IMG/VR virus record: IMGVR_UViG_3300043436_004687
Location: 275,636 to 339,635 of that record
Strand: one strand, 5' to 3'
Length of the DNA stretch: 64,000 nucleotides
The notes beneath the pieces are model-generated. The model had not been told where the DNA came from and searched no databases. It was given only the letters and a program-made list of their open reading frames with translations. Below, in pieces: positions 3,694 through 49,707 of the stretch (position 1 is the first letter of the stretch; every line of letters begins with the position of its first letter). The translations under genes were made by a program, and so were the position numbers.

Positions 3694-4167
3694 TTAATTT
3701 TTAATTTCGGCAAAAATATTGGTGGTATATTTATATGAGTTAGAAATACCCATAATATTCCATTTAGGGTTTTCTAAATTCTCCTTATGTGATGGGCTTT
3801 GTAACCAAGCATATAATGTGGCTTTTGGTGTTGAAAAATTAAAAGCTACGTTTTCACCCACTGAATCTGCTTCTAAATTAGAAACTATTCTCTCACTTCT
3901 TTCCTCAAAATTATCGTGAGAGGGTTTATTATTTTTTTGCATGTAAGTATTATGTTCTAAACATATTTTAGATATGTAGTTAGACAATTTGACTTCTTGA
4001 ATATTTAAAGATTTGCGATATCTATTAACTTCATCAATAATCCCTAATTCAAAATCAGTGTAAAAAAAATTTACATAAGTATTTTCTTTTACCTTATTAA
4101 TTTTCTTTTTCTTAATTAATAGAAAATAAACCAATAAAATTACTATTATTATAATTGCTAATTCCAT
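3694..4167 (-). CDS. CAP (SCP/PR-1) domain protein with N-terminal membrane anchor
   Basis: VNRYRKS, HNTYM, SH, GENVA, WLQSPSHKENL motifs; hydrophobic N-terminus. Confidence 0.85.
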   Translation of the reverse strand: MELAIIIIVILLVYFLLIKKKKINKVKENTYVNFFYTDFELGIIDEVNRYRKSLNIQEVKLSNYISKICLEHNTYMQKNNKPSHDNFEERSERIVSNLEADSVGENVAFNFSTPKATLYAWLQSPSHKENLENPKWNIMGISNSYKYTTNIFAEIKN

Positions 4168-8844: not shown

Positions 8845-9228
8845 TTAAATTATTTTTAATGCTTCTTGTAATCCTAATTCTAAAGCATCTTCAAAACTAT
8901 GATTATTAGTTTCACCTTGTAAGACATTATCAAAATTCCTATCTTTAATTATAACATAATAGTAATTTTTAATTTTACCCATAAAAGATGGGTAAACTAT
9001 TAAATCAATATCATGAACTTCCCTTAACCAATTTTGAAGTGATGACTGTTTTGGTCTAGAATAAAAACTCCTATCTTTTATTTCGCTTCTCCGTCCATTC
9101 CAATTAGTAAAATAGTTTTTATTAAATAGGTCTACTCCCTTTTCATCAAAACCATCTAAAGTGGTTATTTTAAACTCTTTTTCTTTAGCTAATCTAGCTG
9201 TTTCAAATGTAACTAACTGATCTATCAT
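8845..9228 (-). CDS. paralog family 1 protein (QLVTFETARLAKEK subtype)
   Basis: Shares N-terminus, P.QS.LQ.WLRE.H and FEDALELGL with 10847 and 11278. Confidence 0.75.
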   Translation of the reverse strand: MIDQLVTFETARLAKEKEFKITTLDGFDEKGVDLFNKNYFTNWNGRRSEIKDRSFYSRPKQSSLQNWLREVHDIDLIVYPSFMGKIKNYYYVIIKDRNFDNVLQGETNNHSFEDALELGLQEALKII

Positions 9229-10247: not shown

Positions 10248-10847
10248 TTAACAACTATAACTTGTTTTTAAATATGTACCATCTTTTAATGGGTGCAACA
10301 ACCAACCAGAATAATCATCACCCATCATACCAACTCTCTGCCAGACAAAACATTTATTATCAGAACCTAACATATATAGATAACCCTTTTCACCCTTTAT
10401 TCTAGCACATTGGTAGTTTTGATATCCATTTCTTTTTTCGTCAGTTAATTCTATTTCAACTATACCTTCAATATCCCAAGAATCATTATCCTCCATTTCT
10501 TCCCAAAGACGCTTGACATTAATCAAACCCTTAAGTTTCTTTTTCCAAGAATCTCTTTCTTCTTCACGCTTTCTCTCCATTTCGAAAATTTGGTTCCAAG
10601 CATCGGCCATCCATTCTTTTTCTTGAATGACTTTATTTTTCCACATAGATTCTACAGCAGATTTTAATTCATCTATATTAGGTGGAAAAATATTAAAAGA
10701 AATTGGGTTAGCGTCTTCCCAATCACCCATCATATTATATTGTTCTACAACAAGTTTGTTATCAAAATCTATTTTATATCTGCTAACAAAAATGTTAGCG
10801 TAAAAATACCAAAAACCATCTACTAACTCCCAATAACTTTTCTCCAT
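10248..10847 (-). CDS. hypothetical phage protein
   Basis: 199-aa ORF abutting the upstream gene. Confidence 0.6.
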   Translation of the reverse strand: MEKSYWELVDGFWYFYANIFVSRYKIDFDNKLVVEQYNMMGDWEDANPISFNIFPPNIDELKSAVESMWKNKVIQEKEWMADAWNQIFEMERKREEERDSWKKKLKGLINVKRLWEEMEDNDSWDIEGIVEIELTDEKRNGYQNYQCARIKGEKGYLYMLGSDNKCFVWQRVGMMGDDYSGWLLHPLKDGTYLKTSYSC

Positions 10848-11278
10848 TATCCAATTAATTTAAGCCCTTTTTCTAATGCAATTTCTAAAGCGTCTTCCCA
10901 GGTATCAAATTTATATTTTTCTTTCCCAACTGGCTGTTCACCTTTTATCGAGTAAGTATAATATCCAATTTCTAAATAACCAGTATATCTAACTGGGAGC
11001 ACAAAAACATCGATATCATGTTTTTCTCTAAGCCATTTCTGAAGAAGAGTTTGAGTTGGAGCTGAATATGCGTTACTATTTTTACGACTATTGTAGTTAT
11101 GTAACACATATTTGCGAGCTATTATATAACCATGTTCGTTAATATCTTTTTTACCATAATATCCACCACAACATAAAATAGGTTTTTCCTTGCACTCATA
11201 AGAAAAAAATACTTTTTGATTAAAATTTTTTTCTTTTGCAAGTTTGGCTATTTTATAACTTATTAACTTTTCTTCCAT
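10847..11278 (-). CDS. paralog family 1 protein
   Basis: MEEKLISYKIAKLAKEKNF...SAPTQTLLQKWLREKH...WEDALEIAL. Confidence 0.8.
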   Translation of the reverse strand: MEEKLISYKIAKLAKEKNFNQKVFFSYECKEKPILCCGGYYGKKDINEHGYIIARKYVLHNYNSRKNSNAYSAPTQTLLQKWLREKHDIDVFVLPVRYTGYLEIGYYTYSIKGEQPVGKEKYKFDTWEDALEIALEKGLKLIG

Positions 11279-11646
11279 TATTTAATTAATTTTAATCCTT
11301 CTTGTAAACCTATTTCTAAGGCTTCTTCATAAGTTAAATTATCTTTACCTTTAGTAGGAACAAACCACTCCCATAAATCATTATTAATAAAATTAATTTT
11401 ACAATGATTAGATAACGTTAAATCAGCCCAACCAATCATAAAAGTATTTACACATATCTCATGTTCATCTCTTAACCATTGTTGAAGAAAAGATTGGGTT
11501 GGGGCAGATGGTTCATCATAACCATCACTATTGGAATTTATTTGATTTACTAGATTATCATTTTGATAGTAATAATTACATTTTTCACTAAAACCCTTTT
11601 CTTTTGCGAGTTTCGAAGTTTCGAAACTAACTAATTGTTCTTCCAT
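11278..11646 (-). CDS. paralog family 1 protein
   Basis: MEEQLVSFETSKLAKEKGF...SAPTQSFLQQWLRDEH...YEEALEIGL. Confidence 0.8.
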   Translation of the reverse strand: MEEQLVSFETSKLAKEKGFSEKCNYYYQNDNLVNQINSNSDGYDEPSAPTQSFLQQWLRDEHEICVNTFMIGWADLTLSNHCKINFINNDLWEWFVPTKGKDNLTYEEALEIGLQEGLKLIK

Positions 11647-13924: not shown

Positions 13925-14209
13925 CTAGCCATTTAATTTTATATGTTTATTTATCCATTCTAATCTAGGTTCAATTTTACCATCTTCCCAATAAAAAGCT
14001 TCAAGATAAAACCATTGTTTAAAAGCATCTAAACTAGAAAAAAGTGAAGGTCTATTATTTTTAATGTACTTAATTAACAACCCATATTCATCTGCCGTTA
14101 TTAAGTAATACAACTCTAATTTATATACCCAATGGCATAAACCGTTCTCAAATTTATCTTGATGTTGTAACATTAATTCTAGTAATTCTTTAATTGTTCT
14201 AACTTTCAT
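13925..14209 (-). CDS. paralog family 2 protein (copy 1 of 3)
   Basis: LELMLQHQD.F.NGLC.W...PRLEWINKHIK. Confidence 0.8.
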   Translation of the reverse strand: MKVRTIKELLELMLQHQDKFENGLCHWVYKLELYYLITADEYGLLIKYIKNNRPSLFSSLDAFKQWFYLEAFYWEDGKIEPRLEWINKHIKLNG

Positions 14210-14210
14210 T

Positions 14211-14492
14211 TTAATTTAATTTTATATGTTTATTAATCCATTCTAATCTAGGTTTTATATTACCCATTTTCCAATAATAAGCGTCTGGAAAAAAATATAG
14301 TTCAAAAGCATCTAAACTAGAAAAAATCCAGGGTCTATTATTTTTAATATATTTTAATAAAATACCTAATTCATCCATTGTAATTAATTTATTTGCATTC
14401 AAACTAAAAGCCCAATCACATAAACCATTATTAAAGTCATCTTGATGTTGTAGCATTAATTCTAGTAATTCTTTAATTGACTTAATATTCAT
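14211..14492 (-). CDS. paralog family 2 protein (copy 2 of 3)
   Basis: Highly similar to 13925..14209. Confidence 0.8.
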   Translation of the reverse strand: MNIKSIKELLELMLQHQDDFNNGLCDWAFSLNANKLITMDELGILLKYIKNNRPWIFSSLDAFELYFFPDAYYWKMGNIKPRLEWINKHIKLN

Positions 14493-14493
14493 C

Positions 14494-14787
14494 TTAATTG
14501 ATTTTTATATGTTTATTTATCCATTTTAATCTGGGGTTTATTTCACCAAATCCCCAATAATATTCAGGATAATCGAAAAGGGTTTTAAATGAACTCCAAC
14601 TGGAGTATACTGGTGGTTTATTTTCACGAATATATTTTTTTAATATTTCATATTCATTACTAGTGATAAAACGTCTTATGCGTAAATGATAAATCCAGTT
14701 ACACAAACCACTTCTAAATAGATTTTGGTGTTCCAACATCACCTCTAACCATTTTAAAAACCCATTCTTTGTTAGTTGTTCTTGCAT
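14494..14787 (-). CDS. paralog family 2 protein (copy 3 of 3)
   Basis: LEVMLEHQ..F.SGLCNW...NPRLKWINKHIK; likely start MQEQL. Confidence 0.75.
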   Translation of the reverse strand: MQEQLTKNGFLKWLEVMLEHQNLFRSGLCNWIYHLRIRRFITSNEYEILKKYIRENKPPVYSSWSSFKTLFDYPEYYWGFGEINPRLKWINKHIKIN

Positions 14788-15173
14788 ATTTCTATTAATT
14801 TTTTTAAACATTCTAACTCAGCTTCTTCATAATTTTTATAAGTAGGTGAGTAAAAATCTATACAATTAGTCTTATCAATACCAAAATAATAACCAATTTG
14901 ATTTATTTGTTTATACTCTTTCTTTATAAAAGAGTCTAAATTATAAACTACTCTAAACCATTTAAAGGTTTGTTGATATAATGGTGCTAATGTTAAATCA
15001 TCTATTTTATAACCTAAAGATTTAGAAATGCCTGATATAGACATTCCCCAATGCTGATCAACAGCTTTTAAATTGTTATCTTTACTATAAAACCCTAAAC
15101 ATTCCTCATCAAAACCTAATTCTTTTAAACTCAACGCTTGTTCGTAAGGTATAAATTCTTTATTCATCTCCAC
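14772..15173 (-). CDS. paralog family 1 protein (KEFIPYE subtype)
   Basis: MNKEFIPYEQALSLKELGFDEEC...APLYQQTFKWFR...YEEAELECLKKLIE. Confidence 0.8.
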   Translation of the reverse strand: MEMNKEFIPYEQALSLKELGFDEECLGFYSKDNNLKAVDQHWGMSISGISKSLGYKIDDLTLAPLYQQTFKWFRVVYNLDSFIKKEYKQINQIGYYFGIDKTNCIDFYSPTYKNYEEAELECLKKLIEICKNN

Positions 15174-20829: not shown

Positions 20830-20845
20830 CAAAGGTATGAATAAA

Positions 20846-20961
20846 GATCCATATATGCAAATAAAAAGTGTTAAATTTTTACAAATAAAAAACCCTATTC
20901 ACTCTGAAGTTTGGAATAGGGTTTTTAAAAACAAATGTTAGTATTAATCAGATAAAACATT
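20846..20961. repeat. 116-bp perfect direct repeat, copy 1 (copy 2 at 23257-23372)
   Basis: Identical; contains terminator hairpin and the -33 box of the sRNA promoter. Confidence 0.9.
20886..20927. terminator. intrinsic terminator
   Basis: AAAAAACCCTATTC...GAATAGGGTTTTT; duplicated at ~23297-23338. Confidence 0.75.
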
Positions 20962-23240: not shown

Positions 23241-23297
23241 TAAAGGTACAACAAAGGATCCATATATGCAAATAAAAAGTGTTAAATTTTTACAAAT

Positions 23298-23735
23298 AAA
23301 AAACCCTATTCACTCTGAAGTTTGGAATAGGGTTTTTAAAAACAAATGTTAGTATTAATCAGATAAAACATTCGATTTTAAAAATAGGGAATAGTTTTCT
23401 CACCCTATTATGATTGAAACTTTAATATCATCCGACAATGGCGCACATATTGGCAAATCGGAATTAAATCAATCTTTGACAAAACCACCTATCTAGTTTT
23501 TATCTTCTCTTTGAGCCGTGTGAAATCAGTTAATATAAAACGGCATTTGATAGGAATTTAAAATAAACCATTGTGTTAAGTTGCGTACACTACTACTTGC
23601 AATATTAATAAGATTTTAAACACTTGTAATCCTAGTCTTCTTTATGGTTTATTATTTTTTAAAATGAAAGGTAAGTCTTGATGTCTTACGTTAATTCGTT
23701 TTATGATGGCTTGCTTACAACCCTCTCATTTCTTT
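23298..23735 (-). ncRNA. putative ~430-nt structured non-coding RNA
   Basis: Own promoter (TTTG 23766-69, TACCTTTG 23738-45); only very short ATG-started frames; five consecutive stem-closed domains; ends at a terminator. Confidence 0.55.
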
Positions 23736-23917: not shown

Positions 23918-24834
23918 TTAAATAAATTTTCGTATGTTGTCAGCCTCTTTTTTATATTCAGAAGTTTTGATTTTATATTCTGAACATACGTCTTCTAAAA
24001 TTGTCAAAGCCAACAAAGAATTATGTTTTAAGAATTCGCTATCTGAACCAATAGCACCGCTATTTAAAGCACGTTCTAATTTCTTGAATGCGTTTTCTTC
24101 AATATCTTTTAACATTTGTTTTACTCTTACTTTGGAGTATCTTAATGCAGTTTTTTTAGTATTGTCCATAATGTATTTTGATTAATATTTCTTTAGCAAA
24201 GATATGAATTAATATTTAAACTACCAAATAAAAAATGTTAAAGTTTTCTATAATCAAAATTAATAAGGGAATTGCCTCTTGCTCTCTTTTGAATCATTGG
24301 TAAAAATCCAGCACTAAAATAAGGATATTGCCTTTCTAATTCTTTGAATTTTTTTGTACGTCTATCTAACTTTTCAATTACAATATGTACCTTTAATTCA
24401 AAATAATCAAATATGTTAACATTCAAATCAGCAATTTCCTGGCTTTCAAACATTGTACTATTGCATTGTCTATTGGTAAGATTTTCTTTTGCGTTAAGCA
24501 TAATAAATGTATCTCTACCTATCTGAACTAAACTAAATACTTTTTTCATTTTGTTTTTATTTATTTGATTAATACACTACAAAGATATGAATTTATATTT
24601 TAATATCCTAACAAATTATGATAAACTTTTAGCGCAAAAGCTTTCTTTTACATCTTCAAAGTTTCTTTCAATTAATTCTATAGTTACATTTAAAATATAA
24701 CGTTCATCCGTTTCTTTGTTTCCACATCTTAACCAAGTTGAAACATTTTCAGCATCAATCGCAACTATAAATAAATCCCAATTAATACCACTACTAAATG
24801 TAATTTGTAATCTATATTTATGTGCTTTTTTCAT
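23918..24834 (-). other. three single-gene cassettes (23918..24169, 24238..24549, 24616..24834), hypothetical proteins
   Basis: Each ORF is preceded by its own promoter repeat. Confidence 0.7.
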
Positions 24835-24971
24835 TTTGTTTTTTATTATCTTGATTAATACACTACAAAGATATGAATTAATATCTTATAAAACAAATAA
24901 ATTATCATTTATTTTTATTTGAAATTTTAACACTTTTTATTTGGTGGTTTAAAATATATTTTGTACCTTTG

Positions 24972-26779: not shown

Positions 26780-27825
26780 TTAATCAGCGTTCAAAACTTC
26801 TAAATTGTAACCAATGTTTTCTAATTCGTTAAACAAATCTTTGTATTGTTCTTTGGTTGCATCCTTGCAATTGTTTTTGATAAAATCAGAATGACAAATT
26901 GAGTGTTGCCCTAAATTAGCATAACAATCAAATCCATTATCTTTATTTGGCATTTCTGGGAATACTGCCAAAACCTCGCTAAATGGTTGTTCATCCAATT
27001 CACTTGGTGTATATGTAGCAATGTAAAATTGTACTTTGGTAATTTCTGTATCTTTTTTCATTTTGTTTTTATTTATTTGATTAATACACTACAAAGATAT
27101 GAATTTATATTTTAATATCCTAATAAAATATCAATTATTTTCTAAAACCATTTAAAAGTTCATCTAGTAAAATATAACCTACTCCGATAAATGGTAAACC
27201 GCTATTTGGTTCGTAGTTATAATTGTATTGTAGTCTAATTTGCAATTCATTATTTTTATCTAATAAGAAATTTTGAAATCTACTAAATCCAGTAATTGAT
27301 TTTTTAAGAATTTCGTTTACTTCTTTATCAGCTTTTTTTTCTTCATCTGTAAAATCACTTCTTTTTATTCCTTCATAACCTTTATTTTGAAGTGTTAATG
27401 ATGGAAAATTTTTATAAATTTCTAATAAAGTTGAATGTTGCTCCTTAGTTAATAAATTGATTTTCATAATGATTTTATTTATCTTGATTAATACACTACA
27501 AAGATATAAATTAATATTTAGATATACAAATTTATTTTACTTTATTTTCACTATATAATTTTTTCGCTTTATATTGATAACTACCAAAAGAAACAATATG
27601 TTTTTCTACTAAATTATGAATAGTTGCATTATTACTTTCACAAGCTTTTGACAACCTACCTATAAAAACCTTATAAGTTAAAGCACCATTATTAAAATCC
27701 TCAATTGATTTTCTTGCTTTCCAATAGTTTTGATTTTCAGTAGTTCCGTGATTTTCATTTGGAAAAAATCTACTAGTTACTTCCGTAGCCACCTTATTGA
27801 AAAAATCTTCTGTTGTATGTATCAT
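26780..27825 (-). other. three single-gene cassettes (26780..27061, 27135..27467, 27532..27825), hypothetical proteins
   Basis: Each has its own promoter repeat; the first carries a common phage motif AVFPE...CYANLGQHS. Confidence 0.7.
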
Positions 27826-43948: not shown

Positions 43949-44281
43949 TTAATTTTCTTGTTGATTATACCATTTTATAAAATCTAAACAACCACTATAA
44001 ACATATTCTTTACCTTCTAAAATGCTCATATCAAAGATAGTTTTATTATTTCTTTGCCAATGTAGTAATTTAGATTTAAAATCTCCTTTTGCTTTTTGGT
44101 CTATTTCTCTTACTTTTTTCACCACTTCCATCAGCCAATTCCAGTCTTTGTGAAATCTTAATTCACTATCATTAAACCAAATTTGACCATTATATTCAAG
44201 ATTTTTAAAAGCATATAAAAGTTTACTAGCTTTACCAGTTCTTCCTAAGAATTCAGCAAATAATTTATTATTTTCAATCAT
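43949..44281 (-). CDS. paralog family 4 protein
   Basis: NKLFAEFLG...FHKDWNWLMEVVKKV. Confidence 0.75.
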   Translation of the reverse strand: MIENNKLFAEFLGRTGKASKLLYAFKNLEYNGQIWFNDSELRFHKDWNWLMEVVKKVREIDQKAKGDFKSKLLHWQRNNKTIFDMSILEGKEYVYSGCLDFIKWYNQQEN

Positions 44282-44679: not shown

Positions 44680-45460
44680 ATAATTTATCTTTTTAATATT
44701 ACATTACAAAGATATTAAATAATATTTTAATATCCTAATTTAATCGTTAGGATTTTCAATTGAGAATAAAATATTATTTATTGCAGAAAACAACCCATTA
44801 ATATCTCTAATAAATGTTATATTTTCAATCTTACTTTCACCCTCACCAATTAATTCATTTTCATAATATTGGTTACACTTTCTACTGAAGATTAATTCTT
44901 TTTTAGAATAAACTTTCATTTTATATAATTCCCCTTTAGGGGTGAATTCAACTACTAACTCCAAGTTCATTAAATTAGTAGTATTATATAAATTTAAAAC
45001 TACTTTTCGATAATCTTTGTTTACTTTTAGAATATTAAAAGCATCCATTTCATCATCAATAATATTAAAATCAAAACTAGTAAATTCTTTAGTTAAAATA
45101 TCATCTGAAATTAATTTTATAATACTTCTGTCACAAGTAGATTTTGAATAATTGTCAACCAAAATTTGAATTTTAGAATCCAAATCTTTAGTTCTAAAAT
45201 TCAATTCATTTTCCATCAATCTACTAGAAATACTTGACATGGGTAAAATTGCACCATAATCATCATTATTGTTTTTATTATTAACATAATGTTCAGTTTG
45301 TGTGATTGCATCAGCTAATGTATAATTAAAGTGATAACTATCAAAACGTTTATGTTTATCGGGGTTCAAGGATTCTTTTTTTTCAATTTCGTTAGCAGTT
45401 TCTAAAAAATCACTAATAAATTTGTTTGTTAATTCTAATAATTTTGGTGATACTTTCATT

Positions 45461-45910
45461 TTATTTATTTTGTTCGTTATACCATTTGATAAACTCTACA
45501 CAACCATTGTAAAAAGCTTCAATTTTATTTGTTTTTCCCCCATAACTATCAATCGTTATATCTGCGCCACTATAAGAAGTACTTCCTATTTCTATATTGC
45601 AATACATAAGACCTTCTTTTTGATTACTTTTTTGAGAAAGCATTTCAAATCTAAAATCCAAACTTTCAATCTTTTCTACTACTTCCATTAACAAATTCCA
45701 ATCATTTTGAAAATTACAACTATTATAAACATTTTCTTCTACTCGTTGTCTATCACTTGAACCACAAGACCAACCCTTGTGATTTGTGCCTTTGTAATAA
45801 GGTTGATTTACTTCTTCCCATATCTCGATTTTAGCACCCATAAACTCTGCTATTAAACGATTAGTTTCACTTTTATTGTTTTGCGCTATCGCTTCATTTG
45901 TTGTATTCAT
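45461..45910 (-). CDS. paralog family 4 protein
   Basis: NRLIAEFMG...FQNDWNLLMEVVEKIESL. Confidence 0.75.
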   Translation of the reverse strand: MNTTNEAIAQNNKSETNRLIAEFMGAKIEIWEEVNQPYYKGTNHKGWSCGSSDRQRVEENVYNSCNFQNDWNLLMEVVEKIESLDFRFEMLSQKSNQKEGLMYCNIEIGSTSYSGADITIDSYGGKTNKIEAFYNGCVEFIKWYNEQNK

Positions 45911-46024
45911 AATGTTTTTTAATTTGTTGATACAAAGATATAAAATAATATTTTAATAAACAAATAAAAAAGCAACTATTTTTCAAGTTGCTTTTAATTC
46001 CCTCTAATATTCTAAATATTTTAA

Positions 46025-46189
46025 CTACAATTCAATTCCAACTAATTCTAAAGCCATTTCAAGCGATTTTTGATTAGTTTTGTAGTTAGTCCCCACCATA
46101 ATACTTTCAAGTCTTCCATTGTCTCTTGTTGGCGCTTGTTTCTCGTGTGTAGTCCAAGAAGTAACGCCCGAATGTAAACCCCATAAATT
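46025..46189 (-). pseudogene. orphaned 3' end of the DUF932 gene
   Basis: Startless frame NLWGLHSGVTSWTTHEKQAPTRDNGRLESIMVGTNYKTNQKSLEMALELVGIEL*, homologous to the C-terminus of 47036..48007. Confidence 0.9.
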
Positions 46190-46232
46190 GACTTTCCAAA
46201 AATAATTTTATATTTATTATTAAAATAGTTTT

Positions 46233-47057
46233 ATGGAAATAAAAATTTATGGGTTAGTTGACCCAAAAAACAATCAGATTAGATATATAGGTAAAACACA
46301 ACAACCATTAAAAAGAAGATTAACTCAACATATTTATGATAATGGTTTAAGCAATAAATATAAATATAATTGGATAAATAAATTAAAAAATGAAGGTTTA
46401 AAACCACAAATAATAGAACTAGAAACTTGTAATGAGGAAAATTGGGTTGAACGAGAAAAATTCCATATTAAAAATAATAATAATTTGACTAATTTAACAG
46501 ATGGTGGGGAAAGTGGTTTATTTTTTACTAAAGAAATTATAAAAAAAATATCAGATGGTTTAAAAAAGAAATGGTTGGAAGAAGGATTTAAAGAAAGTTT
46601 TTCATTGAGAATGAAAGAATATTGGTCTGACCCACTAAATAGGGAAGAATCATCAAAAAGAATGACTGGTAAAAAAATGCCACTTAGTCACGAAATAAAA
46701 CAAAGAAATAGAAAACTAAATGAATGGAAAGAAAATAAATATAAAGAAAAAATGTCAATTCAAAGTAAAAAATTATGGGAAGATAAAGAATATATTGATA
46801 AAACATTAAAATTTTTAAAATCTGATGAGCATAAAAAAATGGTAAGTGATAGATTTAAAAATTGTAAATTAAGTGAAGAACATAAGAAGAAAATGTCAAT
46901 TTCATCTAAAAATAAAAAACCAGTTATTATTGATGGAGTTGAATTTGAAAGTATTACTGAAGCATCTAAGCTTATCCCAATAAATAGAGATAAGCTTAAA
47001 GTTAGAATTAAATCAAAACATTTTGTGAATTATAATTACAAAGAAACACCACAATAA
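46233..47057 (+). CDS. GIY-YIG homing endonuclease with NUMOD3-like repeats
   Basis: KIYGLVDP...RYIGKT...R..QH, E, N.TDGGE; LSEEHKKKMS; C-terminal FESITEAS HTH-like tail. Confidence 0.9.
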   Translation: MEIKIYGLVDPKNNQIRYIGKTQQPLKRRLTQHIYDNGLSNKYKYNWINKLKNEGLKPQIIELETCNEENWVEREKFHIKNNNNLTNLTDGGESGLFFTKEIIKKISDGLKKKWLEEGFKESFSLRMKEYWSDPLNREESSKRMTGKKMPLSHEIKQRNRKLNEWKENKYKEKMSIQSKKLWEDKEYIDKTLKFLKSDEHKKMVSDRFKNCKLSEEHKKKMSISSKNKKPVIIDGVEFESITEASKLIPINRDKLKVRIKSKHFVNYNYKETPQ

Positions 47058-48007
47058 TCTAACATTAATTCTAATGCTTTTTGATTGGTTTTGTAGTTAG
47101 TTCCCACCATAACACTCTCTAATCTTCCATTTTCTCGTGTAGGAGCTTGTTTCTCGTGTGTAGTCCAAGAAGTACAACCACTAAATAAACCCCAACATGT
47201 ATCTCCCTTCTGTTTGGTTTCTTTTTCAATGTGAGAATAAAGGTTTTCCATGTTACTAATAGCTTTTTGACCAATTAATTTCACAGATTTTTTTGTATCA
47301 ACCTTATTTCCCTCAACTTCAATTCTATTCAAACCAACCAATTCTTTTACAAAAGTTTCAACAAGTTCTTTGGTAACTGGTGTTTTTTCAAATTGTTTGT
47401 AAGCATTGATTAATTTCATTTGTTCAGCCAATGCAAAGGTAATCAAATTTGGCAATTCTTTGATTTTTTCATCCATAGAATTACTATGGCGCATTTTCAT
47501 TTCACCAGCTTTATAAAATCTAAAGAATTGATTTTGACAAGACATAGTAAAATCATTCACACCTACACTCAATCCAGTAGTACCATCATTTGAATCAATG
47601 ATTGTAATGTATTTTTTGATTGTATCTTTACCTACTTTTTCAACACCCTTCACTTCTAATTGGATATATACTTTTCGCCCACTATGTAATGCACCCGCTT
47701 TGTACACACTAAGTTGACCAAATCCCGCAATACCTCTTAAAGCTAATTCAACAACTTCTCTATTTTGAGAGGGTCTATAAGAACTTTTAACGGTATTTAA
47801 ACATTCTTTAGTATCATCTCTGAATAAACCAAAATCAGTTGTACCATAATGGAATAAACCACCATCTTCTGTTTTATGCTCACCCAATAATGGCAATTTA
47901 AGAATTTCAAAATTCAAACCATATTGGTCAAGGATTTGTGTTGTAACATCTGATATTTCAGATTGCGTTGCTTCTAATTCTAATACGTGTGTTTGCTTTT
48001 TATTCAT
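47036..48007 (-). CDS. DUF932 / phage-plasmid protein
   Basis: FRDDT...Y.P.QN.E, GALHSGRKVYI, SNDGT, CQNQF, MRHS motifs. Confidence 0.8.
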   Translation of the reverse strand: MNKKQTHVLELEATQSEISDVTTQILDQYGLNFEILKLPLLGEHKTEDGGLFHYGTTDFGLFRDDTKECLNTVKSSYRPSQNREVVELALRGIAGFGQLSVYKAGALHSGRKVYIQLEVKGVEKVGKDTIKKYITIIDSNDGTTGLSVGVNDFTMSCQNQFFRFYKAGEMKMRHSNSMDEKIKELPNLITFALAEQMKLINAYKQFEKTPVTKELVETFVKELVGLNRIEVEGNKVDTKKSVKLIGQKAISNMENLYSHIEKETKQKGDTCWGLFSGCTSWTTHEKQAPTRENGRLESVMVGTNYKTNQKALELMLDYCGVSL

Positions 48008-49707
48008 AACTATATTTTAATTGTTGATTAATTATTTCGTTAGCAAAGATATAAAATTATATTTTAATATCCAAATTTATATTTCATTAATTGATTGATT
48101 TTTTCTAATTTCAAAATCATTTAAAAAAATGATTTGTTTTTCAGTTATTCCATGTGTAGTTAAATCTCCAAAATTTTCGTGCATCGGTACAATCTTAGTT
48201 ACCTTAACTTCAAAAAATTCATTATCATCATCTTCATCACTAGGAATATTTATAACAACACCCTCATGGTTATGGTCTGTAAACTCCCCCATAATTGCAA
48301 ATTCTATTTTAGCACCTATTTCCATAAATTAATATTTTAATTTGTTGATACAAAGATATAAATTAATATTTTAATATCCTAATTTCTAGCAATAAATTTA
48401 TTTAATTTTGATAATTCATCTCTAATATGTAAATTATCACTTATATTATCTTGATTTAATTGAGTAATATCATATTTCATTAAGAATTCAGAAATATATT
48501 TTAAGGTCTCTTTAATGGCGAATTTAGTACCGCCATTTTGAGAGGGTAAAAAAATTAGATTATTGAATAAAGCTGTTACATAATTACAAGAACCAATTTT
48601 ACAAGTTTCAACAATAATATTGTTTTCGTCCTTATAAACATTTGCACACATTTTATGGAATGTACTAGATTCTAAACCAATTGTTATTTTATTCATTACA
48701 AACCTTTTTAAAATTTTCGATTTGAGTTACCGATAATTCATTGGTTTCACCATCTTCAAATTCATTATGAAATTGATTGTCATTGGTTTTATCAATACAA
48801 TTTATTGTGATTATACCACTATTTTTTGCTGAATCTTCGGCATTTAAAAGAGCATCACAAACGAATTCACAAATTGCTTTTACTTTATTCTCTTCTAAGT
48901 TAGCAATATCTAATATAAATCTAGCCATGTTTTTAGTATTTAGCGGTTAAAGTAAGGTTAAAATCAATAGTATCTTTACTACCATCTTCATCAACAACAT
49001 CAACTGAAAACATCATTTGATATTCGTTATTATTTTTTTCATCAAGTTTTTTGATTTTAACATCTTGAGCATTCAAATCTTCTGAAATGGCTTGAATTAC
49101 CTTATCGGTAACATCTTCACCATTTTTGCCCTCGATAATTGCAGTAATTTTACCTTCTCTCTCATCACTCAATACATAAGAAAGTAACGTTGTTTTAAAT
49201 GATTGTAAGATTATTTTTTTCATAATTTTGATATGTTTTAATTATTATGATACAAAGATATAAATTAATATTTTAATATCCTAATAAAAAATGTTAAAAT
49301 TTAGATTCTAAAAACAAATGGATTTAAGTTTAATTGTTGATTATTATATGCTAAATGATTTTTTCTCCAATCATTATCAGTTTCTTTTTTTGGGAGTGAA
49401 AACCCTTTGCTTTTAAACCAAATAAATAAAATTGATTTAGCTTCTCTTAATGTTTTACATTCAGTTGTTAAACAACGTTGAGTATCACTTCCCCAACCCC
49501 ATTGAATATCAATAGCAAATGTATCACCACAACTTCTTATTTCACCTAATAATCCGTTGCTTCTAAAAATACAACGTATTTTAATTTTTTTGGTTTCGTG
49601 ATGTCTAAATTTAGCCATCCAACTAACAACAACACCATTTTGATAAAAATCCATAATTGAATAATTTTTATCGGGTAAATCACCTCTATATATTACTGCC
49701 ATATCTA

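What the first reader, a model, noticed from the sequence alone, without database searches (positions are those of the whole stretch)
46025..48007. Homing endonuclease that inserts into a gene and supplies a replacement 3' end
Seen: the DUF932 ORF ends ...TCWGLFSGCTSWTTHEKQAPTRENGRLESVMVGTNYKTNQKALELMLDYCGVSL. Beyond the antisense GIY-YIG gene lies a startless second C-terminus NLWGLHSGVTSWTTHEKQAPTRDNGRLESIMVGTNYKTNQKSLEMALELVGIEL*, followed by a terminator. A 30-nt tract is identical (46134-46163 and 47145-47174), and differences cluster at the junction. Known: 3'-end-replacement homing is described for fungal mitochondrial genes. Inference: an intron-less mobile cassette (~46190-47200) that keeps the host gene intact while recoding its own cut site, which implies DUF932 is under selection.
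Basis: partly seen in the sequence, partly recalled or inferred. Interest (0 to 1): 0.7.

Follow-up and report, generated by a model that had tools for sequence, protein, structure and literature searches.

The report
Phage homing endonuclease swapping a gene's tail
In a 340-kb lake-water phage, a selfish GIY-YIG nuclease gene sits inside the end of a conserved gene, supplies a substitute end that keeps the gene whole and leaves the original end stranded downstream, an arrangement known from fungal mitochondria and apparently not yet described for phages.

Summary
The DUF932 gene (47036-48007, minus strand) ends in a 54-codon tail. A startless second tail (46025-46189, minus strand) lies beyond an antisense GIY-YIG/I-TevI-like gene (46233-47057) and is followed by the only terminator.

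The stranded tail is the native one. It is 80-89% identical to the tails of the six closest DUF932 relatives; the tail in use is only 63-68% identical. Three of those relatives have DNA past the stop codon, and there the native tail is followed by a terminator hairpin or the next gene, with no nuclease.

The nuclease belongs to a family (43-63% identity). All ten members with known context lie convergent on the 3' end of a DUF932 gene, scattered over the DUF932 tree.

One close pair (L020 with the nuclease, L034 without) shows the same insertion point. There are 51 identical bases up to the junction, then a tail with about four times the synonymous divergence of the gene body.

The tail in use is a mosaic. 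Its last ~40 nt match the nuclease-linked tail of L016, its middle is of the resident lineage, and its first nine codons are heavily altered.

Cleavage, self-immunity and active mobility are inferred, not shown. This is a new variant of a known kind.

The parts
47036..48007 (-). DUF932 gene (323 aa), the host gene; intact ORF whose last 54 codons are the substitute tail
   Evidence: ORF list. Pfam PF06067 E 5.9e-23. 543 homologues, best 67% identity. AF2 model pLDDT 85.6, pTM 0.80, with the tail modelled as three confident helices.
47036..47200 (-). Substitute ('new') tail: 54 codons plus TAA, a mosaic
   Evidence: 63-68% identical to the tails of the closest relatives, against 80-89% for the old tail. 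Groups with the L016 nuclease-linked tail, support 98/96. By segment: nt 124-165 new-L016 31/42 against new-old 22/42; nt 58-123 new-old 57/66 and new-L147 53/66 against 42-45/66 for other lineages.
47174..47200 (-). First nine codons of the substitute tail (T C W G L F S G C); proposed immunising changes at the cut or recognition site
   Evidence: 12 of 27 nt differ from the old tail, against 10 of 96 in the middle (p 0.0002). dN 0.73 exceeds dS 0.50 here; dN 0.18 and dS 0.60 in the rest. All 7 nuclease-linked tails examined lack His at this position.
46233..47057 (+). Free-standing GIY-YIG homing-endonuclease gene (274 aa), antisense to DUF932
   Evidence: Pfam GIY-YIG 24.2 bits (cut-off 22.6); I-TevI_DNA-bd 26.8 bits (cut-off 27). 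PHROG 314 'homing endonuclease' E 2.6e-16. Residues invariant or nearly so (H33 in at least 90%) in 17 homologues: Y6, R17, Y18, G20, R29, H33, E75, N87. AF2 model matches the I-TevI catalytic domain 1MK0/1LN0 (TMt 0.67-0.74) and DNA-binding domain 1I3J.
47036..47057 (.). 22-nt convergent overlap of the nuclease 3' end with the DUF932 3' end
   Evidence: Coordinates. Same 22-nt overlap in L016/L017; 12 nt in L020, 40 in L067, 9 in L068; gaps of 2 to 30 nt in L022, L069, L070 and L023.
46190..46232 (+). 5' flank of the nuclease gene (promoter-like), abutting the old tail
   Evidence: Weak sigma-70-like match at 46193-46220. The flank aligns across nine lineages, with a conserved TATTTAT and an upstream ...AACCCCA....
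46025..46189 (-). Displaced native ('old') tail: 54 codons plus TAG, no start codon, still open
   Evidence: Translation. 80-89% aa identity to the tails of P0001-P0006. Groups with that clade, support 94/87, with a zero-length terminal branch. nt 58-123 are 57/66 identical to the nearest relative L147.
46134..46163 (.). 30-nt tract identical to 47145-47174 (codons T S W T T H E K Q A)
   Evidence: Exact and maximal. P about 0.005 under an even spread of differences. Three other lineages with the same amino acids differ from it at 2-4 positions by eye.
45968..45995 (-). Intrinsic terminator of the DUF932 unit, now downstream of the old tail
   Evidence: 10-bp stem plus T-run. Relatives L147-L149 and L034, which lack the nuclease, have a hairpin directly after the native stop.
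48040..48069 (-). Promoter-like repeat upstream of DUF932 (TAnnTTTG type on the minus strand)
   Evidence: One of about 35 copies of the motif in the genome, another at 45929-45958. Reading it as a promoter is inference.

Best explanation
This is a free-standing I-TevI-type GIY-YIG homing-endonuclease cassette specialised on the 3' end of phage DUF932 genes.

The mobile unit has four parts:
- the end of a substitute DUF932 tail;
- the nuclease gene on the opposite strand, overlapping that tail's stop codon;
- the nuclease's own promoter region;
- a short piece of target sequence.

The unit sits just before the codons N-L-W-G-L-H of the host gene. The gene therefore keeps an in-frame, functional C-terminus, and the native tail plus terminator are pushed about 1 kb downstream as an untranslated relic.

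Inferred mechanism. The enzyme cuts nuclease-free alleles near that junction. The break is repaired from a nuclease-carrying co-infecting genome. The body-side end primes copying through the substitute tail and the nuclease gene, and the new strand anneals to the tail-side end through the retained target fragment. This would explain the sharp left boundary and the tail duplication.

The carrier genome would be immune for two reasons. The functional copy is altered in its first nine codons, and the relic has lost the upstream half of the site.

In this window the middle of the two tails is of the same sub-lineage. That fits later gene conversion between the two direct repeats, with conversions that restore the cut site being eliminated.

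Shown: the anatomy; which tail is native; recurrence of the arrangement; a presence/absence pair; an intact catalytic domain.
Inferred: cleavage site, immunity, repair pathway, gene conversion.
For: - Anatomy and duplication.
- Native against substitute tail: old tail 80-89% and new tail 63-68% identical to the six closest relatives. In the tail tree OLD joins the native clade (94/87) and NEW joins L016 (98/96). The AU test rejects NEW, taken alone with the native clade and without OLD, at p 0.024.
- Closest relatives lack the nuclease: L147/L148 (P0001) and L149 (P0003) have the native tail followed directly by a terminator hairpin, and L019 (P0006) has the next gene.
- Family-wide position: nuclease homologues in the window, L016-18, the P0124 contig, L020/21, L022, L023-25, L067, L068, L069 and L070 are all convergent within 40 nt of a DUF932 stop.
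- Patchy distribution: at least 6 changes for 7 nuclease-carrying rows on the DUF932 body tree. Nuclease identity (43-63%) tracks DUF932 identity (29-64%) only weakly, rho 0.41.
- Presence/absence pair: L020 and L034 are syntenic. The body is 92% nt identical with dS 0.36. There are 51 identical nt up to the junction. The tail is 72.5% identical with dS 1.5. 885 nt (nuclease gene, its flank and a roughly 30-nt tail remnant) are present only in L020.
- Remnant: a TGGGG... piece of the tail start sits at a fixed distance upstream of the start codon in 8 of 9 lineages.
- Enzyme intact.
- Changes clustered at the junction.
- Real in nature.
Against: - No cleavage, homing or expression data exist.
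- No empty-site variant of this phage was found in eight lake-water runs. These were low-depth Logan contigs, so absence is weak evidence.
- No near-identical donor cassette is in the databases; the closest nuclease is 59% identical.
- The substitute tail is not wholly foreign. Its middle is of the resident sub-lineage, and the AU test does not reject NEW+OLD+native as one clade (p 0.21).
- Outside the window the tail remnants are individually weak (local-alignment p 0.006-0.3).
- The His-to-non-His association with the nuclease rests on 3-4 independent pairs (sign test p 0.125).
- Ordinary phage recombination, rather than nuclease-driven homing, could have spread the module.
Confidence: 0.75

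Rival explanations
1. Local duplication. The phage duplicated its own DUF932 3' end, an unrelated endonuclease gene landed between the copies, and the functional copy then diverged. No cassette carries a tail.
For: The middle of the two tails (nt 28-123) is 90% identical and of the same sub-lineage as the nearest relative. The AU test does not reject NEW+OLD+native as one clade (p 0.21).
Against: The last ~40 nt of the new tail match the nuclease-linked tail of L016 (31/42) better than the old tail (22/42), and NEW joins L016 with support 98/96. The nuclease 3' end overlaps the new stop by the same 22 nt in the window and in L016. In L020/L034 the whole tail has about four times the synonymous divergence of the body. 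All ten family members have the same position on DUF932.
Confidence: 0.1
2. A once-mobile element now passively inherited. It was inserted long ago, and since then it and its flanks have been shuffled among phages only by ordinary homologous recombination. The nuclease is inactive or has been recruited to another role.
For: No empty allele was seen in the population. The closest nuclease homologue is only 59% identical. In most lineages the old tail has decayed to about 30 nt.
Against: The catalytic residues are invariant or nearly so in 17 homologues and the fold is intact. The window's old tail is still a full 54-codon open frame with all conserved residues, which indicates a recent event. 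In a 25% GC sequence an open frame of that length has a chance of about 0.007 (my estimate from base composition). Nuclease presence is scattered over the DUF932 tree, with at least 6 changes for 7 rows. L020 and L034 differ by presence/absence at 92% body identity.
Confidence: 0.12
3. Self-splicing element. The ~1-kb insert is a group I intron or an intein, so the mature product would carry the downstream tail.
For: I-TevI-type enzymes are often intron-encoded (established knowledge). The downstream tail is intact and in the same orientation as the gene.
Against: No Rfam intron match at E up to 1 in 45000-49000. The upstream reading frame continues into a homologous, complete tail with its own stop codon. 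The nuclease gene is on the opposite strand and overlaps that stop. In other lineages the downstream tail has decayed to about 30 nt while the gene stays intact.
Confidence: 0.02
4. Assembly chimera of two DUF932 alleles from co-occurring phages.
For: Metagenome-assembled genome. Many DUF932 variants are present in the same lakes; a contig with 9 differences over 72 nt lies on the tail in run X5.
Against: Independent contigs from several runs (years 2020 and 2024) span the junctions with zero differences at even depth. The same architecture occurs in unrelated assemblies.
Confidence: 0.01

Closest known systems
Fungal mitochondrial mobile endonuclease ORFs with an inserted C-terminus (Allomyces macrogynus atp6; Glomus sp. 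atp6, atp9, cox2, nad3; Rhizopus atp9; Mortierella cox2), as described in PMC3630166
   Same: An endonuclease ORF (LAGLIDADG, or GIY-YIG in atp9) is inserted in the 3' part of a conserved gene. An in-frame substitute C-terminus lies upstream of it. The native C-terminus is retained downstream and clusters with close relatives, while the inserted one does not.
   Different: The host here is a phage, not an organelle. The nuclease gene is on the opposite strand and overlaps the stop codon, instead of following or being fused in phase. The target is a gene of unknown function. The substitute tail is a mosaic. A short target fragment is kept next to the nuclease promoter across the family.
Free-standing Seg (GIY-YIG) and Mob (HNH) homing endonucleases of T4-like phages and intronless homing (review PMC2988022)
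   Same: A free-standing phage GIY-YIG nuclease gene lies beside the gene it presumably cuts. It has patchy presence among relatives and sits at a boundary where sequence similarity changes.
   Different: In T4 the Seg and Mob genes lie between genes, and seven of them are promoter-less cassettes reading with their neighbours. None is described there as carrying a replacement gene end or leaving a duplicated tail.
Endonuclease insertions inside phage genes that keep function: mobE in Aeh1 nrdA, mobA in the T4 topoisomerase gene, seg in phage 25 gene 43 (PMC2988022)
   Same: A homing-endonuclease gene is inserted within a coding region of an important phage gene without loss of function.
   Different: In those cases the gene is split into two polypeptides that reassemble. 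Here the gene stays in one piece because a substitute end is supplied.
I-TevI (T4 td intron endonuclease)
   Same: Two-domain build: an N-terminal GIY-YIG catalytic domain and a C-terminal DNA-binding domain joined by a long linker. The model matches 1MK0/1LN0 and 1I3J. Catalytic residues fall at the equivalent positions (the I-TevI numbering is from my own knowledge).
   Different: Not intron-encoded. No sequence match to any solved structure at E up to 0.1. The linker is longer and has three repeats of K..MS...K.LW type. Target and cleavage distance are unknown.
Integrative elements that insert into the 3' end of tRNA or protein genes and restore it from their own attP (established knowledge)
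   Same: The inserted element carries a copy of the target's 3' end, so the gene stays intact and the original end is displaced.
   Different: No integrase is present. The duplicated segments are only 75% identical rather than an identical att core. The enzyme is a homing endonuclease.
Nuclease genes at boundaries of genetic exchange between phages (PMC10448857)
   Same: The nuclease gene sits exactly where sequence similarity between related phages changes (L020/L034).
   Different: A text search of that paper for duplication, remnant and related terms found no account of tail replacement or duplication of a host-gene end.

Membership tests
GIY-YIG homing endonuclease, I-TevI/Seg type | GIY-YIG catalytic domain with the conserved Tyr, Tyr, Arg, His, Glu and Asn | tested here: met
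   Pfam PF01541 24.2 bits against a cut-off of 22.6. Y6, Y18, R29, E75 and N87 are invariant and H33 is at least 90% conserved in 17 homologues. Fold match to 1MK0/1LN0: TMt 0.67-0.74, rmsd 2.4-2.6 A.
GIY-YIG homing endonuclease, I-TevI/Seg type | Separate C-terminal sequence-specific DNA-binding domain | tested here: inconclusive
   PF20987 scores 26.8 bits, just under the cut-off of 27. The database's precomputed annotation lists PF20987 for this protein. The model matches 1I3J over 67 columns at 30% identity, TMt 0.41. Binding was not tested; the complex job was not folded.
GIY-YIG homing endonuclease, I-TevI/Seg type | Presence/absence polymorphism at one site among close relatives | tested here: met
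   L020 (with the nuclease) and L034 (without) are 92% identical in the gene body, and 885 nt are present only in L020. The window's closest relatives lack the nuclease.
GIY-YIG homing endonuclease, I-TevI/Seg type | Cleaves the nuclease-free allele and not its own genome; over-inherited in mixed infection | not testable with these tools
   Only indirect evidence: changes cluster in the first nine codons of the substitute tail.
Endonuclease ORF with C-terminal replacement (fungal mitochondrial 'gene hybrids') | Endonuclease ORF inserted in the 3' part of a conserved gene, with an in-frame substitute C-terminus upstream of it | tested here: met
   The ORF is intact and dN/dS is about 0.3 outside the junction.
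Endonuclease ORF with C-terminal replacement (fungal mitochondrial 'gene hybrids') | Native C-terminus retained downstream and clustering with close relatives; inserted C-terminus clustering elsewhere | tested here: met
   OLD groups with the native clade (94/87) and NEW with L016 (98/96). Caveat: only the last ~40 nt of NEW are clearly of foreign type.
Endonuclease ORF with C-terminal replacement (fungal mitochondrial 'gene hybrids') | Endonuclease ORF on the same strand as the host gene, often in phase with it | tested here: not met
   The nuclease gene is antisense and overlaps the host stop by 22 nt. It is convergent in all ten family members examined.
Group I intron or intein | Conserved intron RNA structure or in-frame intein; the product is joined across the insert | tested here: not met
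   No Rfam hit at E up to 1. The frame ends with a stop after a complete homologous tail. The nuclease gene is on the opposite strand.
Integrase-type integrative element restoring a gene's 3' end | Site-specific recombinase and an identical att core flanking the insert | tested here: not met
   The insert holds only the nuclease gene. The repeats are 123/165 identical with a 30-nt identical core. Pfam and PHROG scans found no recombinase among the neighbouring genes scanned.

The most novel reading that the evidence does not exclude
The element may be more than a nuclease gene that happened to duplicate a tail. It may be a self-contained 'tail-swapping' cassette family. Its kept fragment of target sequence (TGGGG..., the W-G-L-x-S-G-V codons), at a fixed distance upstream of the nuclease start codon, would be a working part: either the homology arm that captures the tail-side end of the break, or an operator through which the enzyme represses its own promoter as I-TevI does. 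The two tails in one genome would then exchange sequence by gene conversion under nuclease-imposed selection that keeps the cut site destroyed. A related enzyme in L037, placed on the other strand relative to DUF932, also carries an antisense piece of the DUF932 tail inside its promoter region.
Probability: 0.3. Interest if true: 0.75.

Novelty: new variant of a known kind. Interest (0 to 1): 0.62.

Why it matters
The arrangement shows a third way for a homing-endonuclease gene to live inside an important phage gene without an intron or intein and without splitting the protein: it brings a replacement end.

The family is recurrent (ten lineages, freshwater and other metagenomes) and always targets the same codons of DUF932. 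This marks that uncharacterised protein as conserved and probably important in large Bacteroidota-type phages.

It also gives a natural series of insertion ages, from a full stranded tail (this window) to 30-nt relics. With that series the life cycle of such elements, the role of kept target fragments and nuclease-driven mosaicism of phage genes can be studied.

For annotation, it warns that C-terminal parts of phage genes next to nuclease genes may be chimeric, and that 'intergenic' DNA may hold displaced gene ends.

Tried and rejected
- **Group I intron or other RNA family.** Nothing found in 45000-49000.
- **Empty-site variants in public runs.** Eight lake-water runs were laid, and no joint skips the cassette. 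These are Logan contigs at low depth, so absence is weak evidence.
- **Asn codon before L-W-G as an immunity marker.** I first thought its replacement (N to T or S) marked nuclease-carrying alleles. The wider sample shows T at that position in several lineages without the nuclease (L034, L053, L056, L048), so the link is confounded by lineage.
- **His to non-His two codons later.** It goes the same way in 3-4 independent pairs and never the other way, but the sign test cannot reach significance (p 0.125).
- **Tail remnants upstream of the nuclease in other lineages.** Individually they are weak in local alignment against shuffles (p 0.006-0.3). Their weight comes from the shared position and from the L020/L034 synteny.
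- **Counting error.** A Fisher test used a miscounted 21/135.
- **The idea that old and new middles are uniquely alike.** This was tempered once DNA of the nearest relative was fetched. Old-L147 is as similar (57/66) as old-new.
- **Protein-DNA complex prediction.** Neither counts as evidence.
- **Other duplicated ends.** There are none next to the other two GIY-YIG genes of the genome or in the related loci.
- **DUF932 fold search.** No match above noise: Foldseek TM at most 0.16, VIA best Z 7.4.
- **Literature.** No phage report of C-terminal duplication by a homing endonuclease in the searchable library. Subscription-only papers are not covered.
Full report
**Setting.** The window is the last 64 kb of a 339,635-bp virus record with direct terminal repeats. 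GC content is 25%. The sequence is found in lake-water metagenomes from 2020 and 2024. Most genes here lie on the minus strand. A promoter-like repeat of TAnnTTTG type precedes many of them. One DUF932 relative is labelled Bacteroidota. I infer a large phage of a Bacteroidota host.

**The observation.**
- The DUF932 ORF is 47036-48007 (-), 323 aa, PF06067 E 5.9e-23.
- A 274-aa ORF at 46233-47057 (+) carries a GIY-YIG domain (24.2 bits, cut-off 22.6). It also has an I-TevI-type DNA-binding domain (26.8 bits, cut-off 27).
- The two genes converge and overlap by 22 nt.
- On the minus strand, 46025-46189 reads as a second complete DUF932 tail of 54 codons plus a stop. It has no start codon, and stop codons lie just upstream in frame.
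- The two tails share 40/54 residues and 123/165 nt.
- The only intrinsic terminator of the unit (45995-45968, minus strand) follows the second tail.
- Contigs from several runs cover both junctions without a difference.
- No other gene-tail duplicate lying across a nuclease gene exists in the genome.

**Which tail is native.** Among 120 homologues the best six (59-67% identical in the body) have tails 80-89% identical to the downstream tail and only 63-68% identical to the tail in use. With the downstream tail substituted, the window's similarity to these relatives returns to the level they show among themselves.

In a tree of the tail columns the downstream tail joins this clade (support 94/87) with a zero-length branch. 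The tail in use joins the tail of L016, another large phage that carries a homologous nuclease (98/96). The AU test rejects placing the tail in use, without the old tail, in the native clade (p 0.024). It does not reject a clade holding both window tails plus the native group (p 0.21).

DNA of the nearest relatives shows the native tail followed directly by a terminator hairpin (L147/L148 = P0001; L149 = P0003). In L019 (P0006) the next gene follows and there is no nuclease. A search scored on the tail alone found no protein with the TCWGLFSGC or LDYCGVSL features.

**A nuclease family tied to DUF932.** Full-length homologues of the nuclease (45-59% identical to the window's) were read in their contigs. 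All lie on the strand opposite to a DUF932 gene, with their 3' end within 40 nt of its stop codon:
- L016/L017/L018: the same 22-nt overlap; the tail ends LLDYCGLSL, against LMLDYCGVSL in the window;
- the P0124 contig;
- L020/L021, L022 and L023-L025;
- L067, L068, L069 and L070, from the metagenome scan.

None of 41 DUF932 loci from viral contigs has such a gene.

On a tree of the DUF932 body the seven carriers with full data need at least six changes of state, which is about as scattered as random labels. Pairwise identity of the nucleases (43-63%) follows that of their DUF932 genes (29-64%) only weakly (rho 0.41, p 0.065).

The enzyme looks active. Y6, R17, Y18, G20, R29, E75 and N87 are invariant and H33 nearly so in 17 homologues. 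The AF2 model (pLDDT 86) matches the I-TevI catalytic domain (1MK0/1LN0, TMt 0.67-0.74) and DNA-binding domain (1I3J).

**A presence/absence pair with the same junction.** L020 (with the nuclease) and L034 (without) are syntenic.
- The DUF932 body is 92% identical in DNA (dN 0.03, dS 0.36).
- The last 51 nt before the junction are identical.
- From the codon after K, just before T-L-W-G-L, identity falls to 72.5% for the whole tail (dN 0.21, dS 1.5).
- 885 nt are present only in L020: the nuclease gene, its 5' flank and a roughly 30-nt remnant reading T L W G F Y Y G I.
- L034 has instead the native tail, a hairpin and 121 nt that L020 lacks.

The fourfold synonymous divergence of the tail shows a different origin rather than faster protein evolution. 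The junction is the same as in the window, where the old tail begins N-L-W-G-L-H.

L016/L017 keep a comparable remnant (N V W G * F C G T). In 8 of 9 lineages a ...AACCCCA... (the complement of TGGGGTT) lies at a fixed distance upstream of the nuclease start codon, next to a conserved TATTTAT. Individually these remnants are weak. Together with the L020/L034 synteny, I read them as decayed old tails, of which the window holds the only complete one. That makes the window's insertion the most recent in the sample.

**The substitute tail is a mosaic.** The 42 differences between the two window tails lie at both ends: 12 in the first 27 nt, 10 in the middle 96 nt and 20 in the last 42 nt.
- In the last ~40 nt the tail in use is closer to L016's tail (31/42) than to the old tail (22/42).
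- In nt 58-123 it is close to the old tail (57/66) and to the nearest relative L147 (53/66), and far from other lineages (42-45/66).
- The part that demonstrably travels with the nuclease is therefore the tail's end, which it overlaps.
- The middle is of the resident sub-lineage. Either the donor was a close relative, or gene conversion between the two direct repeats has occurred. This would also account for the 30-nt identical tract (P about 0.005 under an even spread).
- The first nine codons (T C W G L F S G C against N L W G L H S G V) carry an excess of amino-acid changes (dN 0.73, dS 0.50, against 0.18 and 0.60 in the rest).
- All seven nuclease-linked tails examined lack His at this position (F, L, M, F, F, M, F), while the nearest nuclease-free relatives in several pairs have it. 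With only 3-4 informative independent pairs this remains suggestive (p 0.125).

**Mechanism (inferred).** By analogy with I-TevI and the T4 Seg enzymes (PMC2988022), the protein would cut nuclease-free DUF932 alleles near the junction. Its DNA-binding domain might sit on the strongly conserved T-S-W-T-T-H-E-K codons some 30-55 nt downstream.

Repair from a carrier genome by synthesis-dependent strand annealing would leave the recipient's gene body untouched up to the cut. It would copy the substitute tail, the nuclease gene and its flank, and it would close on the recipient's own tail through the kept target fragment. This reproduces both the sharp left boundary (51 identical nt in L020/L034) and the duplication.

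The carrier would be immune because its functional copy is altered at the junction, and because the relic has lost everything upstream of the N codon.

Transcripts of DUF932 must now run antisense through the nuclease gene to reach the terminator, which may damp nuclease expression. None of these steps has been tested.

**Comparison with what is known.** The arrangement matches in logic the 'gene hybrids' of fungal mitochondria. There a mobile endonuclease ORF brings a foreign C-terminus for atp6, atp9, cox2 or nad3, and the native C-terminus stays downstream and clusters with close relatives (PMC3630166). It differs in host, in strand arrangement (antisense, overlapping stops) and in the mosaic tail.

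For phages, the T4 review lists nuclease genes between genes and three cases where an insertion splits a gene into two working parts. It lists no replacement of a gene end. Searches for such a report in phages found nothing, within the limits of the open-access library.

I therefore rate it a new variant of a known kind. It is well supported as anatomy and natural history, and untested as biochemistry.

**The target gene.** DUF932 remains of unknown function. PHROG 1221 carries no annotation. The confident model (pTM 0.80) has no solved structural relative above noise. The tail forms three confident helices, which fits the need for a compatible replacement.

Noticed in passing
window 45929-45958, 48040-48069 and about 33 further sites (genome 294-334 kb): A roughly 30-nt repeat, ACAAAGATATAAAATAATATTTTAATAAAC. 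On the minus strand it reads ...TATCTTTG, the TAnnTTTG type known from Bacteroidota promoters (my own knowledge). It precedes many minus-strand genes, and Logan contigs pile up on it (depth 281 against about 24). It is probably the phage's early promoter and a hint at the host phylum.
   Followed up: partly
window 20830-20941 and 23242-23349: A 108-nt repeat, 94% identical at the translated level, holding a hairpin AAAACCCTATTC...GAATAGGGTTTT. It lies in two intergenic regions 2.3 kb apart. A weaker pair lies at 24716-24922 / 27044-27142.
   Followed up: no
G000:C1:69333-70046 (+) (L002 1492-2205) and G000:C1:48489-49169 (-) (L003 1111-1791): Two more GIY-YIG genes in the same genome (33-40% identical in the N-terminal domain). 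The first is also antisense to its neighbours, with its 3' end 13 nt from the 3' end of a minus-strand gene, but no duplicated gene end was found.
   Followed up: partly
L037 2048-2996 (same phage as L072, L073): A 34%-identical relative of the nuclease lies downstream of DUF932 on the SAME strand, after the native tail and its terminator. Its 5' flank is homologous to that of the window's family. The promoter spacer holds CATGTGTAGTC, the antisense of the DUF932 T-T-H-E codons (14 of 15 nt). The nuclease module seems to carry a target fragment whichever way round it sits.
   Followed up: partly
L019 2736-3245, L028 about 1110-1616, L075 495-1007, L135 645-1196: A short GIY-YIG protein (169 aa in L019) matches the N- and C-terminal parts of the family but lacks the repeat linker. 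It lies just upstream of the DUF932 5' end (same strand in three loci, divergent in L135). DUF932 thus seems to attract related nucleases at both ends.
   Followed up: no
L020 (reverse complement) about 3895-3960; L034 about 4020-4090; L037 about 2115-2150: A GC-rich element conserved downstream of DUF932 in different AT-rich phages: GGTAGGTTGGAGTCTACTCTC...CCCTCGACCCGTTTCGGTTA. It may be a structured RNA or a protein-binding site.
   Followed up: no
window 13925-14811; 8845-9228 with 10847-11646; 43949-44281 with 45461-45910: Tandem and nearby paralogues of small genes: three copies at 50-67% identity, and others at 31-36%. The gene just downstream of the old tail is one of them, sharing a C-terminal ...FIKWYN.Q motif with 43949-44281.
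   Followed up: no
window 47036-48007 (protein): The DUF932 model is confident (pLDDT 85.6, pTM 0.80): an N-terminal beta-sheet domain and a C-terminal helical domain. No solved structure matches above noise. The low-ranking look-alikes include AcrIIA11 (Z 6.2) and PsiB (Z 4.6), and no weight should be put on them.
   Followed up: partly
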